NCBI RefSeq assembly: GCF_006345805.1
Contig: NC_043000.1
Coordinates: 5,146,001-5,210,000, forward strand
Reading direction: 5' to 3'
Length of the DNA: 64,000 nt
Source of the DNA: Octopus sinensis
Lineage: Eukaryota
In this document: in pieces, positions 9,425 through 64,000 of the stretch
How the letters are laid out: the number at the start of each line of letters is the position of its first letter
How positions within the stretch are numbered: the first letter of the stretch is position 1
Made by a program: the position numbers and the translations under genes
Notes under the pieces: model-generated
Told to the model about the DNA's origin: nothing
Seen by the model: the letters and a program-made list of their open reading frames with translations, nothing else
Database searches by the model: none

Positions 9425-9569
9425 TATGTGTATATATATATATATAATATAAGGGATATTAGCCAACCGAATATGGCTAGGGACAGGGCAGGGTGGTGGG
9501 GGTGTCACTGTTGCATTTAGCCCCAGGCGAACATCAACGTCACCAGATAGGCCTGACGCCATCACGACG

Positions 9570-9712
9570 TCCTTTATCTTGCAAAGGGAGATCACTCACC
9601 AACAAGCCGATACCACACACGGACCTAGGTTTCAAGGTGTGTTGCCTATTATCAACGTGTGGTAGGCATCGCTTCTCGATGAACGACCAACTTTGCAAGA
9701 TACATATAAGGA
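9570..9712 (-). ncRNA. Type I hammerhead ribozyme, U3-A8 core variant, extended stem I
   Basis: CACACG-UUGAUAA-UAGG CAACACA CCUU-GAAA-C CUAG G-UC-CGUGUG; predicted cleavage between 9622 and 9621; stem I extends about 50 bp with G.U pairs. Confidence 0.8.
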
Positions 9713-9808
9713 TTCTATTATAGACAGTGACTGCTCCGTAATATAAGGGATATTAGCCAACCGAATATGGCTAGGGACAGGGCAGGGTGGTGGGGGTGTC
9801 ACTGTTGC

Positions 9809-9850
9809 CACGTTGATAATAGGCAACACACCTTGAAACCTAGGTCCGTG
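9809..9850 (+). ncRNA. Second copy of the same hammerhead, 5' arm of stem I truncated to 4 bp
   Basis: CACG-UUGAUAA-UAGGCAACACACCUU-GAAACCUAGGUC-CGUG; predicted cleavage after 9846. Confidence 0.7.
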
Positions 9851-10066
9851 TGTGGTATCGGCTTCTTGGTGAGTGATCTCCCTTTGCAAGATAAAGGACG
9901 TCGTGATGGCGTCAGGCCTATCTGGTGACGTTGATGTTCGCCTGGGGCTAAATGCAACAGTGACACCCCCACCACCCTGCCCTGTCCCTAGCCATATTCG
10001 GTTGGCTAATATCCCTTATATTACGGAGCAGTCACTGTCTATAACTCATTTAGAGATTTATTATTG

Positions 10067-10228: not shown

Positions 10229-10386
10229 CAGGAGTGGCTGTGTGGTAAGTAGCTTGCTTACCAACCACATGGTTCCGGGTTCAGTCCCACTGCGTGGCAC
10301 CTTGGGCAAGTGTCTTCTATTATAGCCTCGGGCCGACCAAAGCCTTGTGAGTGGATTTGTTAGACGGAAACTGAAAGAAGCCCGTC

Positions 10387-10419
<33 letters not shown>

Positions 10420-10644
10420 CGTGTATGTTTGTGTGTCTGTATTTGTCCCCCTAGCATTGCTTGACAGCCGATGCTGGTATGTTTATGTCCCCGTCACTTA
10501 GCGGTTCGGCAAAAGAGACCGATAGAATAAGTACTGGGCTTACAAAGAATAAGTCCCGGGGTCGAGTTGCTCGATTAAAGGCGGTGCTCCAGCATGGCCA
10601 CAGTCAGATGACTGAAACAAGTAAAAGAATAAAGAGTAAAAGAG
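10229..10644 (+). mobile_element. Full-length SINE family A
   Basis: Near-identical to 2383-2810. Confidence 0.9.
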
Positions 10645-14829: not shown

Positions 14830-15296
14830 ACTAATGAGTAAATTTATTCAATAAAATCACAATTGACTTCAACCACAGTCGACCTTGAAATCTCCTGCAA
14901 CTCTTCTGGGCAGTCTCCTTGTTTAAATTGGTGAATGCTGCCATAATCCTTGCCTTCAGTTCATGTTTGATGTTACAAGGAGTTTTGTTGGTCCCCTGCT
15001 CAACTGCACCCCACACATAATAATCAAGGGGGTTGCAGTCTGGGGAGTTAGGTGGCCAAATGTTAGGTGTGAAGTGGTTGCAGAAATTGTCTGACAGCAA
15101 TGACTAGGTTCTCCTGCTTGTGTGGCATGGTGGAGAGTCCTGTTGCCAAACATAGGGTCTTCCAGCAGCCACCCTCTTGACCCTGGGCAGCACTACCTCT
15201 TTCAGGCACTTGATGTAGGCCTCCATGTTGAGTCTGATGCTGTATAGGAAGATGAAAGGAGGCATAATGTCACCATCACTAATGATCACCCCAAAC
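14830..15296 (-). pseudogene. Tc1/mariner DD37D (maT-type) transposase C-terminal remnant
   Basis: WQQDSPPCHTSRRT*SLLSDNF...WPPNSPDCNPLDYYVWG: 37 residues between the 2nd and 3rd catalytic D; in-frame TAG; 5' part lost at a SINE A fragment. Confidence 0.9.
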
Positions 15297-15530
15297 ATAC
15301 ATGTATGTGTGTATGTATATGTTTGTGTGCCTGTATTTGTACCCCCTAGCATTGCTTGACAACCGATGCTGGTGTATTTACATCCCCATAACTTAGCGGT
15401 TCGGCAAAAGAGACTGATAGAATAAGTACTAGGCTTAGAAAGAATAAGTTCTGGTGTCAATTTGCTCGACTGATGGCGGTGCTTCAGCGTGGCCACAGTC
15501 AAATGACTGAAACAAGTAAAAGAATAAAGA
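15297..15530 (+). mobile_element. SINE family A 3' half
   Basis: CCCCTAGCATTGCTTGACAACCGATGCTGG...GACTGAAACAAGTAAAAGAATAAAG. Confidence 0.85.
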
Positions 15531-15817
15531 ATCAGAATTAAAAATGATACTGGACATTCAAAGATTTTTTTGACAAGATGACATATAATAATGAAAGCTT
15601 AGATTAAGTGTTTCAGAAAAATTCAGGTTTATTAACACTTCTCAGTTATAAGTCTTGATGAGAGATAAAGAAGAACTGATAAGAGTTTAAAAGATATTTT
15701 GTCTTCTTTTATCTGTAAGTTCTATTATCAATTTTTGAGCTCAAGTAAAGATGAGGGTGAGAGCAAAAAGCGCACTTATATGGTTTCAGTGTTTGTACTC
15801 AATAAAACCAAAACTTT

Positions 15818-30952: not shown

Positions 30953-30956
<4 letters not shown>

Positions 30957-31815
30957 TCCTGTGTCAGGCCGAAGAACGAAATGTTCCAAGATAAGAGTCT
31001 TTCTAATCTAATGTTGTGGTTGAGCTGTTTATTATTATTATTATTACTATTATTAGTAGTATTAGTATTGTCCCTTTGATCCTCGGTCGAAAATTTGCTT
31101 ATCATTATTATTATTATTATTATTTATTATTATTATTACTATTTTCAGCTTCGCCTTGTATTGCATATTATTCTCCATACAGGGGTTTTTTTCAATGGCG
31201 GCCCATTTTCGCGGGGTTCCACTATTCCCTTCTCTCTCTCCCTCTTTTACGTTGTCTGCCATCCCCCCCTCTTCCTTTGCTAAGAGCATTTTTAAGCCAG
31301 CCCGTCATATTCCTGTGTCAGGCCGAAGAACGAAATGTTCCAAGATAAGAGAGTCTTTCTAATCTAATGTTGTGGTTGAGCTGTTTATTATTATTATTAT
31401 TACTATTATTAGTAGTATTAGTATTGTCCCTTGATCCTCGGTCGAAAATTTGCTTATCATTATTATTATATTATTATTATTATTATTATTATTACTATTT
31501 TCAGCTTCGCCTTGTATTGCATATTATTTCTCCATACAGGGGTTTTTTCAATGGCGGCCCATTTTCGCGGGGTTCCACTATTTCCCTTCTCTCTCTCCCT
31601 CTTTTACGTTGTCTGCCATCCCCCCTCTTCCTTTGCTAAGAGCATTTTTAAGCCAGCCCGTCATATTCCTGTGTCAGGCCGAAGAACGAAATGTTCCCAA
31701 GATAAGAGAGTCTTTCTAATCTAATGTTGTGGTTGAGCTGTTTATTATTTATTATTATTACTATTATTAGTAGTATTAGTATTGTCCCTTTGATCCTCGG
31801 TCGAAAATTTGCTTA

Positions 31816-31852
<37 letters not shown>

Positions 31853-32023
31853 TTTCAGCTTCGCCTTGTATTGCATATTATTTCTCCATACAGGGGTTTT
31901 TTCAATGGCGGCCCATTTTCGCGGGGTTCCACTATTTCCCTTCTCTCTCTCCCTCTTTTACGTTGTCTGCCATCCCCCCTCTTCCTTTGCTAAGAGCATT
32001 TTTAAGCCAGCCCGTCATATTCC
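30953..32023. repeat. Tandem triplication of an about 355-bp unit
   Basis: Units start ATATTCCTGTGTCAGGCC at 30953, 31307 and 31663; array ends with ATATTCC at 32017-32023. Confidence 0.95.
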
Positions 32024-40624: not shown

Positions 40625-41081
40625 GAGTGAGAGAGCAGTTCATGCCATCAAAGTGACACTGGGGTAAAATATACGAAGCCCAGTATACCCATCATGACTA
40701 CCCATCTGATAAGGGTACACCGGGCACATGCATCACAACCATATGTGCGCGACATGGTGATCTCATATCAAGATAAACAGCACATGACCTTGCAGGTGGG
40801 GCCCAGTTAGAATTTTCTTCTCCTCGAGTAGCCCATCCTGCTCAAAAGGTCCCTGAATAAGGGTTGTTTAAGGATGTTGAAAGAACCACCCATGTTTCCA
40901 GAGGTGAATTATTCAAATTCCAAAGAATCCCTCTCAACACATGGCTATGATGCTCCCCCACTACTTCTGCTCGTGATCAGAGATATACATATCGTCAGCC
41001 ACTAAGGGACATGCTCAACTGGTTAAGCTCAAACAACTGACAAGCAAATCTGTGGTATTGAGCAGAATATTTGCTGTAGCC

Positions 41082-41163
<82 letters not shown>

Positions 41164-41620
41164 GAGTGAGAGAGCAGTTCATGCCATCAAAGTGACACTG
41201 GGGTAAAATATACGAAGCCCAGTATACCCATCATGACTACCCGTCTGATAAGGGTACACCAGGCACATGCATCACAACCATATGTGCGCGACATAGTGAT
41301 CTCATATCAAGATAAACAGCACATGACCTTGCAGGTGGGGCCCAGTTAGAATTTTCTTCTCCCCGAGTAGCCCATCCTGCTCAAAAGGTCCCTGAATAAG
41401 GGTTGTTTAAGGATGTTGAAAGAACCACCCATGTTTCCAGAGGTGAATTATTCAAATTCCAAAGAATCCCTCTCAACACATGGCTATGATGCTCCCCCAC
41501 TACTTCTGCTCGTGATCAGAGATATACATATCGTCAGCCACTAAGGGACATGCTCAACTGGTTAAGCTCAAACAACTGACAAGCAAATCTGTGGTATTGA
41601 GCAGAATATTTGCTGTAGCC

Positions 41621-43664: not shown

Positions 43665-44337
43665 GTACTAAGAACAAACTACATAAAATATAAAATAGAC
43701 AACAGCACAAAGTGACAAGTGCAGAATTTGTGGACAAAATGGTGAAATCGTATGGCATATTACCAGCCAATGTATGCCACTAGCCCAGAAGGAATATAAG
43801 AGATGCCTTGACAATATAGCCAGGCTTGTCCATTGGACACTCTGCAAAAAATTGGTACGACCACAAACCTGAAAGCATTGTTGAAAATAGAAATGCAAAG
43901 ATCCTATGGGATTTTAGGATTCAATGTGACCATGAGATAGAGAATAGGAAGTCAGACAGTTTTGAGAAAGAAAACATATTATGCTGGATCATAGACATAG
44001 CAAACCCAGCTGACAGCAAGGTATGCAATATGGAAGAAAGAAAAGTCGATAGATATGACAGGTCAGCTTGGGAGGTTAAGCAGTTGTGGTCAATTGAAAA
44101 TGTAGCAGTAGTACCAATAATTGTTGGAGCCCTGGGAACAGTGAGCAAAAATCTCAAGAAGTATGTGGAACAAATAGGGGCTGCAATTAGGGTGGAGCAC
44201 TTGCAGAAAACAGCATTGCTTGGAACTGCTCGAATACTCTGGAAGGTGCTCGAAAAATAAGAGGTGTTACCTTAGTTCACTGGTAGTGAACAGCTGACAC
44301 TGTAGTACATTTCCAGCGTTAGAAGCTGTGCAAAGGC
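43662..44337 (+). mobile_element. 5'-truncated R4/Dong-clade non-LTR retrotransposon in a (TAA)n array
   Basis: CCHC knuckle CRICGQNGEIVWHITSQC, then the restriction-like endonuclease ILWDFRIQCD...IIDIANP...VVPIIVGALG...LQKTALLGTARILWKVL; frameshifts; (AAT)n on both sides. Confidence 0.9.
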
Positions 44338-49106: not shown

Positions 49107-49510
49107 GGCGCAGGAGTGGCTGTGTGGTAAGTAGCTTGCTAACCAACCACATGGTTCCGGGTTCAGTCCCACTGCGTGGCATCTTGGGCAAGTGTCTTCT
49201 GCTATAGCCCCGGGCCGACCAATGCCTTGTGAGTGGATTCGGTAGATGGAAACTGAAAGAAGCCTGTCGAATATATATATATATATATATGTATGTGTGT
49301 TTGTTTGTGTATCTGTGTTTGTCCCCCTAGCATTGCTTGACAACTGATGCTGGTGTGTTTATGTCCCCATTACTTAGCGGTTCAGCAAAAGAGACCGATA
49401 GAATAAGTACTGGGCTTACAAAAAGAATAAGTCCCGGGGTTGAGTTGCTCGATTAAAGGCGGTGCTCCAGCATGGCCGCAGTCAAATGACTGAAACAAGT
49501 AAAAAGAGTA
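49107..49510 (+). mobile_element. Full-length SINE family A
   Basis: Near-identical to 2383-2810. Confidence 0.9.
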
Positions 49511-59760: not shown

Positions 59761-60366
59761 GGGTGAGTGGGTGTGAAGAAAGGATTAAAGGTAGACAAAC
59801 AGATATTTGTCAGTAAAAACCAGTATTAAAGGAGGGAGGGGAGAGGGAGAGAGAGGAAGAAAGAAATGCGCAATGTATGTGTGGAGAGAGAGAGAGAGAT
59901 AGAGAGACAGAGAGAAAGAGAGATACATAGTGTGTGTGGAAAAAGACAGAGAATGTGAAAGAGATAGACAGAGTGTGTGGTGAGAGATAGAAAAAGATAG
60001 ACAAAGTATATGGAGAGAGAAAGAGAGAGAGAGAGAGAGAGATACACCAAGTATGTAGAGAGACAGAGAGAGGGTGAAGGAGAGTTCACTTGTATGTATA
60101 GTAGTGTATAAAGATTTGCGTGGGGAGGGGAAGAGAATGTGTGTGTGTTTGTGCAAACTGGTAAGATGATGTATTCAGGTATCTTAAAATAGATAGATAG
60201 ATAGTTAGAGGGAGGGAGAGAGAGAGAGAGAGAAAGAGAGAAAGGGAGGGAGGGGTTGTGAGTAAAGAGAGAACACAGAAATTTGTGAGTTAAAAAAAAT
60301 AACCCAATACAATAATAAAAAATAATATTAACAAGGAATGCAAATATAAATGACCAAATTACATAC

Positions 60367-60445
60367 CTGTCTTAGTAGCAGGTAATAAACCAAAAGAGAA
60401 GATCAATCATTTTGAACTTACCTGTAATAGAAGAAAAGGTAAAAT
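60367..60445 (-). promoter_or_regulatory. Candidate recursive splice site (AG|GTAAGT) with a 55-nt cryptic exon
   Basis: Minus strand CTAAT-TTTACCTTTTCTTCTATTACAG|GTAAGT; 55 nt later CAG|GTATGT. Confidence 0.55.
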
Positions 60446-60605
60446 TAGAGAACATGTATAAGATGTTTGTACATATTGAATTTATAAATACAGGTGACAA
60501 AGTTAATACATAATATTTATAAATGCACATGACATGATGTTATTATATAATCGGCGAACAGGTGAACACAGGTGTCCATATAAAAATAAATATGAATATA
60601 TTCAA

Positions 60606-61022
60606 TAAGAAGCATGCTTCTCAACCACATGGTTCTGGATTCAGTACCATTGTATGGCACAAGTGTCTTCCACAATAGCCTCGGGCTGACCAAGGCCTTG
60701 TCAGTGGATTTGGTAGTCAGAAACTGAAAGAAGCTCGTTGTGTATATGTGTGTGTGTGTGAGTGTGTGTGTGAATATGTATATATGTATGTAGGTAGGCA
60801 TTTGCATGTGTGTGTCTGTATTTGTCCCCACCACACTGCCATCACTTGACAACTGATGCTGGTGTGTTTATGTCCCCGTAACTTAGCAGTTCAGCAAAAG
60901 AGGCTGATTGAATAAGGACTAGGCTTACAAAGAATAAGTCCTCGGATTGATTTCTTCAACTAAAACCCTTTGAAGCAGTGCTCCAGCATGGCCGCAGTCA
61001 AATGACTGAAACAAGCAAAAGA
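60606..61022 (+). mobile_element. SINE family A
   Basis: Body and tail match family A. Confidence 0.85.
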
Positions 61023-61064
61023 ATGTATTCATATATATGAAGTGCCAATCTCTAATTGTGGAGG

Positions 61065-63087: not shown

Positions 63088-63504
63088 AACAGGAGTGGCT
63101 GTGTGGTAAGTAGCTTGCTTACGAACCACATGGTTCCAGGTTCAGTCACACTGCGTGGCACCTTGGGCAAGTATCTTCTACTATAGCCTTAGGCCAACCA
63201 AAGTCTTGTGAGTGGATTTGGTAGACGGAAACTGAAAAGAAGCCCGTCGTGTATATGTATACGGACGTTAAATGATGATGATGATGATGATGATGATGAT
63301 GTATATGTGTGTTTGTGTTTGTTCCCCTAACATCACTTGACAACCGATGCTGGTGTGTTTATGTCCCCGTAACTTAGCGGTTCGGCAAAAGAGACCGATA
63401 GAATAAGTACTGGGCTTATAAAGAATAAGTCCTGGGGTCGATTTGCTCGACTGAAGGCGGTGCTCCTGCATGGCCACAGCCAAATGATTGAAACAAGTAA
63501 AAGG
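63088..63504 (+). mobile_element. Full-length SINE family A with a short family B tail in its centre
   Basis: CGGACGTTAAAT(GAT)n at 63262-63300 inside the central microsatellite. Confidence 0.9.
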
Positions 63505-64000
63505 GTATCCATACATACATACAGGCCTACATAAATGTATACAGACATAGGTGCATGTTTTAGTACAAAACATCCACCCCCAACCTATTGACAGATATGC
63601 AGTTCACACGTATTGGCATATTGGCATAAACAGTTATTGGAACTAATATCTCTGTTATCACGTAGCTAATTAGTATTATTTATATGTTGTTTCGAGACTA
63701 ATATTGAATTTTTATTGCATATTTATACATTTATGGCTGTTGCATATGAGAAATACGTGGGAGAATTTGTGTATCTTTACATGTGAAATAGAATAGATAC
63801 GTTTATCTGTGATGTATCTTAATTTTCATGTGTGTGTGTTAGTGTGTGTATGTGAATATGTGTGTGTGTGTGTGTGCGTGTGTGTGTGCATGGGGTTATA
63901 TGTGAGTGTAAATGTGCGAGTGTGTATGTGTAATTGTGTATGTATGTATGTGTGTGTGTGTGAGTGTGTGTGCATATACATGTGTTTGTGTTTGTGGATG

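What the first reader, a model, noticed from the sequence alone, without database searches (positions are those of the whole stretch)
60361..60445. Recursive-splicing (ratchet) signature with a poison RS-exon
The minus strand has a branch point CTAAT about 23 nt upstream, an AG-free pyrimidine tract TTTACCTTTTCTTCTATTAC, then AG|GTAAGT, a perfect donor regenerated at the acceptor (60422/60421). A second donor CAG|GTATGT follows 55 nt later (60367/60366). The 55-nt exon has stops in all three frames. This acceptor-donor-cryptic-exon architecture is established for recursive splice sites in long Drosophila and vertebrate introns. Together with the lack of coding exons in 64 kb, it suggests a giant minus-strand intron removed stepwise; I am not aware of this being characterised in cephalopods.
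Basis: partly seen in the sequence, partly recalled or inferred. Interest (0 to 1): 0.7.

Follow-up and report, generated by a model that had tools for sequence, protein, structure and literature searches.

The report
Candidate recursive splice site in octopus
A short stretch of octopus DNA matches the sequence pattern of the "ratchet" sites that flies use to remove giant introns stepwise, more closely than chance readily explains, but without RNA data or related genomes its use is unproven.

Summary
On the minus strand there is CTAAT (branch A at 60445), a 20-nt pyrimidine tract, AG|GTAAGT (junction 60422/60421), a 55-nt segment, then CAG|GTATGT (60367/60366).

The octamer alone is at chance level (2 seen, 2.4 expected). 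"Stops in all three frames" is uninformative, because 21% of all 55-mers in the window show it.

The composite is unusual. On a matrix built from 36 validated Drosophila ratchet points the site scores 24.8 bits, within the range of real sites; the next-best AGGT in the window scores 8.2. Three null models give 0.0003-0.002 chance cores per window, about 10-90 per 2.7-Gb genome. A second donor this strong 30-100 nt downstream adds a factor of about 0.005. These are also the only two strong donors on the whole minus strand.

The window is octopus DNA, and no coding exon was recognised.

Whether the minus strand is transcribed, whether this lies in an intron, and whether the core is conserved could not be tested. 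No orthologous locus or RNA data was retrievable. Strand asymmetries hint weakly at minus-strand transcription.

Verdict: a good in-silico candidate, not a demonstrated recursive site. P(real recursive element) about 0.45, chance about 0.25.

The parts
60444..60448 (-). Branch-point-like CTAAT; the branch A at 60445 lies 23 nt upstream of the acceptor junction.
   Evidence: Read directly. An exact CTAAT at a suitable distance has a probability of about 0.05-0.07 by composition (my estimate).
60424..60443 (-). Pyrimidine tract TTTACCTTTTCTTCTATTAC (17 of 20 pyrimidines, no AG), with TT at -5/-6 and C at -3.
   Evidence: TT at -5/-6 is present in 196/197 and 36/36 fly ratchet points.
60424..60616 (-). 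A 193-nt AG-free zone upstream of the acceptor. It is not a microsatellite and is T-rich and G-poor on this strand.
   Evidence: the previous AG is at 60618; composition is T 87, A 56, C 33, G 17.
60416..60423 (-). Ratchet-point core AG|GTAAGT: acceptor AG at 60423-60422, with the regenerated donor GTAAGT at 60421-60416.
   Evidence: 24.8 bits on the fly ratchet-point matrix; the next-best AGGT in the window scores 8.2 bits.
60367..60421 (-). Putative cryptic recursive-splicing exon of 55 nt. The length is not a multiple of 3 and there are stops in all three frames.
   Evidence: [quoted passage not shown]
60361..60369 (-). Downstream exon donor CAG|GTATGT, matching the consensus at 8 of 9 positions.
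   Evidence: It is one of only two donors matching at 8 of 9 or better on the whole minus strand; the other is the ratchet point 55 nt upstream.
60606..61037 (+). Flanking SINE-A copy with a tRNA-like head, in antisense orientation relative to the proposed minus-strand transcript. It marks the upstream edge of the single-copy island.
60187..60253 (.). Flanking (CT)n/(GA)n microsatellite, marking the downstream edge of the single-copy island 60254-60605.

Best explanation
The site is a genuine recursive splice element of the Drosophila 'ratchet point plus cryptic exon' type, lying in a long intron of an octopus gene transcribed from the minus strand.

Inferred mechanism:
1. The 55-nt segment is recognised by exon definition, through its strong acceptor (CTAAT branch point, pyrimidine tract, first AG in 193 nt) and its downstream donor CAG|GTATGT.
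2. It is joined to the upstream exon, which lies outside the window or is unrecognised.
3. That junction regenerates a near-perfect donor, xxx|GTAAGT.
4. This donor outcompetes the exon's own donor, so the 55 nt are removed together with the rest of the intron and the mRNA keeps no trace.
5. Occasional use of the downstream donor would instead insert 55 nt, shifting the frame and introducing a stop.

What is shown: the sequence pattern and its statistical rarity. What is inferred: transcription, intron context, and every splicing step.
For: - Every motif feature is present at the stated coordinates.
- The site scores 24.8 bits on a matrix from 36 high-confidence fly recursive sites. The leave-one-out interquartile range of the real sites is 23.1-28.6, and 11 of 36 score lower. 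The next-best of 367 AGGT sites in the window scores 8.2 bits.
- It shares the fly hallmarks: TT at -5/-6 (36/36; 196/197), C at -3 (33/36), and a pyrimidine tract of at least 15/20 (35/36).
- Chance rate of such a core per 64-kb window: 0.002, 0.001 (this null over-predicts weaker sites, 18 expected against 5 seen), and 0.0003. That is about 10-90 per 2.7-Gb genome. A second strong donor 30-100 nt downstream multiplies this by 0.005, or by 0.05 for a 7-of-9 match. At most about one or two chance look-alikes are therefore expected per genome.
- The cryptic exon length (55 nt) and its out-of-frame, non-coding character match fly cryptic recursive-splicing exons.
- Predicted U1 pairing is -12.1 kcal/mol for CAG|GUAAGU against -9.9 for the exon donor. 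This fits the rule that the ratchet donor is usually the stronger one.
- The acceptor is the first AG in 193 nt.
- No exon was recognised in 64 kb.
- Weak strand hints favour minus-strand transcription. SINE-A copies run 18:3 antisense to the minus strand (p = 0.0015). Donor-like 9-mers in unique sequence run 41 (+) to 20 (-) despite symmetric base composition (p about 0.01).
Against: - There is no RNA evidence, no conservation evidence, and no proof that the minus strand is transcribed or that this is an intron.
- Recursive splicing has not been described in any mollusc in the literature searched, so the number of true sites in octopus, which drives the posterior, is unknown.
- In human, only 342 of 36,870 conserved strong-acceptor AGGT sites had junction support in the three cell lines studied, and 16 showed a saw-tooth pattern. 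Motif alone over-predicts heavily there.
- The acceptor half of the site (13.8 bits) is below the fly median (19.5).
- The donor-like strand asymmetry is larger than expected for long introns, loses significance against an order-3 model (p = 0.12), and comes mostly from CAGGT rather than GTAAGT.
- The second SINE family shows no orientation bias (6:8).
- My thresholds were chosen after seeing the site. Under loose definitions the architecture is expected 0.01-0.1 times per window.
Confidence: 0.45

Rival explanations
1. Chance. This is an unused sequence coincidence in T-rich non-coding octopus DNA, either intergenic or on the non-transcribed strand, with no function.
For: - The octamer is at chance frequency, and stops in all frames are common.
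- The local sequence is T-rich and G-poor, which raises the local chance rate of a core about five-fold (4.3e-8 against 7.9e-9 per position).
- Under loose definitions the architecture is expected 0.0085-0.096 times per window, so a scan of many windows would turn some up.
- In human, about 99% of motif-and-conservation candidates lacked junction support in the three cell lines studied.
- No transcription evidence exists.
Against: - Three independent nulls give 0.0003-0.002 per window for the core alone.
- The second strong donor adds a factor of 0.005-0.05.
- There is a 16.6-bit gap to the next-best AGGT in the window.
- The two strongest donors of the whole minus strand lie 55 nt apart.
Confidence: 0.25
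2. A conventional short non-coding exon that is not spliced recursively. Two forms are possible. It could be a 55-nt cassette, UTR or lncRNA exon that happens to begin with GTAAGT. Or it could be a first exon starting downstream of the TATATAA at 60549-60543 and ending at 60422, with two alternative donors 55 nt apart.
For: - A strong acceptor and a strong donor lie 55 nt apart.
- Hundreds of annotated exons in deuterostomes begin with a donor-like sequence and are nevertheless included.
- TATATAA lies 121 nt upstream of the junction on the minus strand.
- The CAG|GTAAGT in the unspliced RNA is itself a 9-of-9 donor.
Against: - My rough count of how many real exons would combine all these features by coincidence is at most about one per genome. 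This is inference, not a tool result.
- An internal exon ending at 60422 would need an acceptor more than 193 nt upstream, inside the SINE, where no pyrimidine tract precedes the AG.
- TATATAA is common in this AT- and microsatellite-rich DNA.
Confidence: 0.2
3. A relic. These are genuine splice signals inherited from a decayed gene copy or carried by a low-copy mobile element, and they are no longer used.
For: - The window is dense in transposable-element remnants; 45% of it matches other parts of the window.
- The island is bounded by a SINE and a microsatellite.
- A low-copy repeat cannot be excluded with only 84 kb of octopus sequence in hand.
Against: - The 352-bp island has no other copy in the window or in L002.
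- Both donors, the tract and the branch motif are intact, which would not be expected after long neutral decay.
Confidence: 0.1

Closest known systems
Drosophila intronic ratchet points with cryptic recursive-splicing exons (Ubx, kuz, Bx, luna; Hatton 1998, Burnette 2005, Duff 2015, Joseph 2018/2021, Pai 2018)
   Same: - A juxtaposed acceptor|donor with a strong pyrimidine tract, TT at -5/-6 and CAG|GTAAGT.
- A short (about 50 nt), non-coding, out-of-frame cryptic exon ending in a second donor.
- A ratchet donor at least as strong as the exon donor.
- A matrix score within the range of real sites.
   Different: - The organism is a mollusc, and no recursive splicing is described there.
- Intron context, ultraconservation of the core and RNA intermediates, all of which define the fly sites, are untested here.
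- The acceptor half is weaker than the fly median.
Vertebrate recursive-splicing exons in long neuronal genes (Sibley 2015; Zhang 2018; Blazquez 2018)
   Same: The exon-definition model, in which a cryptic exon starts with a partial donor, the reconstituted and downstream donors compete, and inclusion introduces a premature stop.
   Different: - Vertebrate sites were defined by junction reads, saw-tooth coverage and conservation in introns of tens to hundreds of kb.
- Repression of the regenerated donor by the exon junction complex is a deuterostome feature whose status in molluscs is unknown.
Intronic pseudoexons, meaning unused acceptor-donor pairs (Sun and Chasin 2000, as cited)
   Same: An acceptor-like and a donor-like site at exon-like spacing in non-coding DNA, with no coding potential.
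   Different: Ordinary pseudoexons do not carry a perfect donor immediately at the acceptor. That extra coincidence costs about 3e-5 per position in real octopus sequence.

Membership tests
Recursive splice site (ratchet point) with cryptic recursive-splicing exon | Juxtaposed acceptor and donor around AG|GT, scoring like known sites. | tested here: met
   24.8 bits on a matrix from 36 high-confidence fly sites. Leave-one-out interquartile range 23.1-28.6, minimum 13.6.
Recursive splice site (ratchet point) with cryptic recursive-splicing exon | Prominent pyrimidine tract with TT at -5/-6 (196/197 fly sites). | tested here: met
   17 of 20 pyrimidines, no AG, TT at -5/-6, C at -3.
Recursive splice site (ratchet point) with cryptic recursive-splicing exon | A downstream donor defining a short cryptic exon of about 50 nt. 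| tested here: met
   CAG|GTATGT (8 of 9) lies 55 nt downstream. Probability 0.005 by chance.
Recursive splice site (ratchet point) with cryptic recursive-splicing exon | The regenerated donor is generally stronger than the exon donor. | tested here: inconclusive
   GTAAGT against GTATGT. U1 duplex energy is -12.1 against -9.9 kcal/mol if the upstream exon ends in CAG. The real upstream exon is unknown.
Recursive splice site (ratchet point) with cryptic recursive-splicing exon | The cryptic exon is non-coding or out of frame. | tested here: met
   55 nt, with stops in all frames. This is uninformative, because 20.7% of random 55-mers show the same.
Recursive splice site (ratchet point) with cryptic recursive-splicing exon | Lies on the sense strand of a very long intron. 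| tested here: inconclusive
   No exon was recognised in 64 kb. There are weak hints of minus-strand transcription. The window could not be placed in any annotation.
Recursive splice site (ratchet point) with cryptic recursive-splicing exon | The core is strongly conserved between species while the flanks are not. | not testable with these tools
   No orthologous locus was retrievable: a protein-based search gave 0 hits and a metagenome scan for the 24-mer core gave 0.
Recursive splice site (ratchet point) with cryptic recursive-splicing exon | RNA intermediates: exon-to-site junction reads, lariats starting at the site, and saw-tooth intron coverage. | not testable with these tools
Poison cassette exon (regulated unproductive splicing) | Regulated inclusion in mature mRNA that leads to nonsense-mediated decay; usually highly conserved. 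| not testable with these tools
   Only the presence of stops is shown, and that is at chance level.

The most novel reading that the evidence does not exclude
Fly-type zero-nucleotide recursive splicing operates in the giant introns of a cephalopod, using the same pattern: TT at -5/-6, CAG|GTAAGT, and a cryptic exon of about 50 nt. The ratchet-point mechanism would then extend to Lophotrochozoa. It would be either ancestral to bilaterians or evolved repeatedly wherever introns became very long.
Probability: 0.4. Interest if true: 0.6.

Novelty: new member of a known kind. Interest (0 to 1): 0.45.

Why it matters
Recursive splicing is documented in insects and vertebrates. The literature I could search has nothing on molluscs.

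Octopus genomes are large, SINE-rich and have long genes, so how they remove long introns accurately is an open practical question. A validated site would show that the ratchet-point pattern is shared across the three major bilaterian branches.

The fly-derived matrix separates this site from the next-best candidate in the window by 16 bits, so it would also give a ready search tool for finding more sites.

On its own, this is one unvalidated in-silico candidate. Its value is as a specific, cheaply testable prediction.

Tried and rejected
1. Treating the octamer as significant. Rejected: 2 observed against 2.4 expected.
2. Treating stops in all three frames as evidence for a poison exon. Rejected: 20.7% of 55-mers have them.
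3. The idea that the site sits in a repeat. Rejected at the sensitivity available: the island 60254-60605 has no other copy in the window or in L002.
4. Structured RNA or tRNA. Rfam and ARAGORN found nothing in the window.
5. Retrieving the same or an orthologous locus. This led nowhere by any route: exact look-ups of 13 window ORFs, a homology search with the frame spanning the SINE and the unique flank (0 hits), and a metagenome scan for the 24-nt core (0 hits).
6. The ENA contig L001, reached through a LINE ORF, lacks the octopus SINEs and is a different genome.
7. Looking for coding exons. Six-frame ORFs gave only SINE frames, microsatellite frames and mobile-element remnants, and Pfam found nothing in the ten most protein-like ORFs. 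Short exons would escape this search.
8. Poly(A)-signal strand asymmetry as a marker of transcription. None was found (84 against 90).
9. An order-5 Markov null. Discarded because it overfits a 64-kb training sequence.
10. Sibley et al. 2015 could not be read.

Full report
THE OBSERVATION

On the minus strand the sequence reads ...ctCTAATtttaccttttcttctattacAG|GTAAGTtcaaaatgattgatcttctcttttggtttattacctgctactaagaCAG|GTATGTaa.... The coordinates are:
- CTAAT at 60448-60444, with the branch A at 60445, 23 nt from the junction
- the 20-nt pyrimidine tract at 60443-60424
- the acceptor AG at 60423-60422
- GTAAGT at 60421-60416
- the 55-nt segment at 60421-60367
- the second donor junction at 60367/60366

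All three frames of the 55 nt contain stops. Every statement in the finding about the letters is correct.

WHAT KIND OF DNA THIS IS

The window is 36% G+C and rich in microsatellites, with no Rfam or tRNA hit. About 45% of it matches other parts of the same window. Two short interspersed repeats dominate:
- A roughly 420-bp element with a tRNA-like head, which I call SINE-A: 23 fragments, about 21 copies.
- A second family, famB: 14 fragments.

A mariner/Tc1-like transposase remnant has its highest-identity hit (75%) in a hypothetical protein of Octopus vulgaris. The 20-kb locus around that gene is L002, from chromosome OX597814.1 of GCA_951406725.2. It carries both SINE families at the same density and has the same G+C content.

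Six-frame ORFs show only SINE frames, microsatellite frames and mobile-element remnants. Pfam finds nothing in the ten most protein-like ORFs. Short exons would escape this test.

The finding lies in a 352-bp island (60254-60605) that has no other copy in the window or in L002. The island is bounded by a (CT)n microsatellite and a SINE-A copy.

IS IT MORE THAN CHANCE?

- AGGTAAGT occurs twice on the two strands against 2.4 expected.
- 20.7% of all 55-mers in the window have stops in all three frames.

The composite is a different matter. I took the flanking sequences of 36 high-confidence Drosophila recursive sites from the first 36 rows of S1 Table of Pai et al. 2018 and built a 37-position matrix from them.
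- The octopus site scores 24.8 bits.
- The real sites, scored leave-one-out, have an interquartile range of 23.1-28.6 and a minimum of 13.6.
- Eleven of the 36 real sites score lower than the octopus site.
- The next-best of the 367 AGGT sites in the window scores 8.2 bits.

The site also has each hallmark the fly sites share. TT at -5/-6 is present in 36/36 here and in 196/197 in Duff et al.. C at -3 is present in 33/36, and a tract of at least 15/20 pyrimidines in 35/36.

Three nulls estimate how often a core this good arises by chance:
- A Markov-3 simulation gave 1 hit in 60 Mb, which is 0.002 per window.
- An exact score distribution averaged over the local composition of 200-nt tiles gave 7.9e-9 per position, which is 0.001 per window or about 43 per 2.7-Gb genome. 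This null is conservative, since it predicts 18 sites of at least 4 bits where 5 are seen.
- A model-free product of the empirical frequencies of an equally good acceptor half (13 of 168,492 positions) and donor half (5 positions) in real octopus DNA gave 2.3e-9 per position, which is 0.0003 per window or about 12 per genome.

A second donor matching the consensus at 8 of 9 positions, 30-100 nt downstream, has probability 0.005 (0.05 at 7 of 9). These two donors are the only ones at 8 of 9 or better on the entire minus strand, whereas the plus strand has seven scattered ones.

The full architecture is therefore expected at most about once or twice per octopus-sized genome. My thresholds were set after seeing the site. 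With deliberately loose definitions the expectation rises to 0.0085-0.096 per window.

OTHER SEQUENCE FEATURES

The acceptor AG is the first AG in 193 nt of non-microsatellite sequence. That would favour its use, although the stretch is locally G-poor (9% G), which explains part of it.

Predicted U1 pairing is -12.1 kcal/mol for CAG|GUAAGU and -9.9 for CAG|GUAUGU. The regenerated donor would thus equal or beat the exon donor, as in most fly and 67% of human sites. This depends on the unknown last bases of the upstream exon.

The site's acceptor half (13.8 bits) is weaker than the fly median (19.5). Its donor half (11.1) is slightly above the fly median of 10.1.

IS THE MINUS STRAND TRANSCRIBED?

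This cannot be shown here. Three asymmetries point weakly that way:
- SINE-A copies are 18 plus to 3 minus (p = 0.0015), so they lie antisense to a minus-strand transcript. FamB is unbiased (6:8), and SINE-A in L002 is 5:3.
- Donor-like 9-mers (7 of 9 or better) in unique sequence are 41 plus to 20 minus, although base composition there is symmetric. This gives p about 0.01 against an order-1 expectation and 0.12 against order-3.
- T-runs are commoner on the minus strand.

Depletion of G|GTAAG-like motifs on the sense strand of introns is an established signature. However, it is strong only in short introns (Farlow et al.). Here it comes mainly from CAGGT rather than GTAAGT. Poly(A) signals are symmetric. 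I treat these asymmetries as hints only.

WHAT COULD NOT BE DONE

No orthologous or independent copy of the locus could be retrieved:
- Exact look-ups of 13 window ORFs failed.
- A homology search with the frame that spans the SINE and the unique flank returned nothing.
- A metagenome scan for the 24-nt core returned nothing.

Conservation and RNA evidence, the two properties that define real sites in the literature, are therefore untested. The human experience is a warning. Of 36,870 conserved intronic AGGT sites with strong acceptors, 342 had junction support in the three cell lines studied and 16 showed a saw-tooth pattern.

WEIGHING THE EXPLANATIONS

Chance look-alikes of the full architecture number about one per genome. 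Ordinary exons or first exons that would show all these features by coincidence are, by my rough reckoning, similarly few.

True recursive sites of this quality would number tens if octopus resembles Drosophila, which has 200-500 sites. They would number few or none if it resembles human, or if it lacks the process. That unknown dominates the uncertainty.

My estimates are:
- about 0.45 for a genuine recursive element
- 0.25 for chance
- 0.20 for a conventional non-coding exon, including a first exon downstream of the TATATAA at 60549-60543
- 0.10 for a relic of old splice signals

COMPARISON WITH WHAT IS KNOWN, AND NOVELTY

In pattern this is a Drosophila-type ratchet point with a cryptic exon, and it fits the exon-definition and donor-competition model shared with vertebrates.

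Membership is not established. Four motif features are met, the donor-strength and intron-context tests are inconclusive, and conservation and RNA intermediates could not be tested.

A full-text search found one paper holding both "recursive splicing" and "cephalopod", each only once in passing. The evolutionary survey in Blazquez et al. included no mollusc. If validated, this would be a new member of a known kind in a new phylum. That is moderately interesting and directly testable with public octopus RNA-seq and genome alignments.

Noticed in passing
whole window; SINE-A copies listed (e.g. 2404-2786, 10246-10630, 49128-49504, 60606-61037, 63107-63517): The roughly 420-bp tRNA-headed SINE is oriented 18 plus to 3 minus (binomial p = 0.0015). 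The second SINE family is 6:8, and the same SINE in an O. vulgaris locus is 5:3. The bias is local to this window and unexplained. It may reflect a long minus-strand transcription unit.
   Followed up: partly
whole window, unique (non-self-matching) sequence: Donor-like 9-mers (at least 7 of 9 matches to CAGGTAAGT) are twice as common on the plus strand (41 against 20), although base composition is strand-symmetric. The effect comes mostly from CAGGT, not GTAAGT.
   Followed up: partly
9445-9659 and 9809-10023; also 9718-9808 and 9954-10044: Perfect (100%) inverted duplications of 215 nt and 91 nt, separated by about 150 nt. Such identity suggests a very recent palindromic duplication or an assembly fold-back artefact.
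   Followed up: no
30953-32023: A tandem array of a 356-bp unit, 3.0 copies, 97% matching.
   Followed up: no
40631-41541: Two near-identical ORF pairs 539 nt apart (40631-40807 with 41170-41346; 40832-41002 with 41371-41541) indicate a tandem duplication of about 540 bp. That is beyond the period limit of the tandem-repeat tool.
   Followed up: no
14834-15598 (minus strand): A mariner/Tc1-like transposase remnant in two frames, with a SINE-A fragment at 15297-15525. The highest-identity hit (75%) is a hypothetical protein of Octopus vulgaris, and a relative carries Pfam DDE_3, PF13358. Pfam did not match the remnant itself.
   Followed up: partly
43820-44257 (plus strand): A 146-aa open frame resembling the C-terminal part of a retrotransposon protein. 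It has 35 unnamed relatives on large ENA eukaryotic contigs, the best at 66% identity, and no Pfam match.
   Followed up: partly
60543-60549 (minus strand): TATATAA lies 121 nt upstream of the AG|GT junction. If it were a promoter element, the segment ending at 60422 could be a first exon with two alternative donors. The motif is common in this AT-rich DNA.
   Followed up: no
13850 (plus strand): The only other AGGTAAGT in the window. It has no pyrimidine tract upstream and serves as an internal control showing that the octamer alone is unremarkable.
   Followed up: yes
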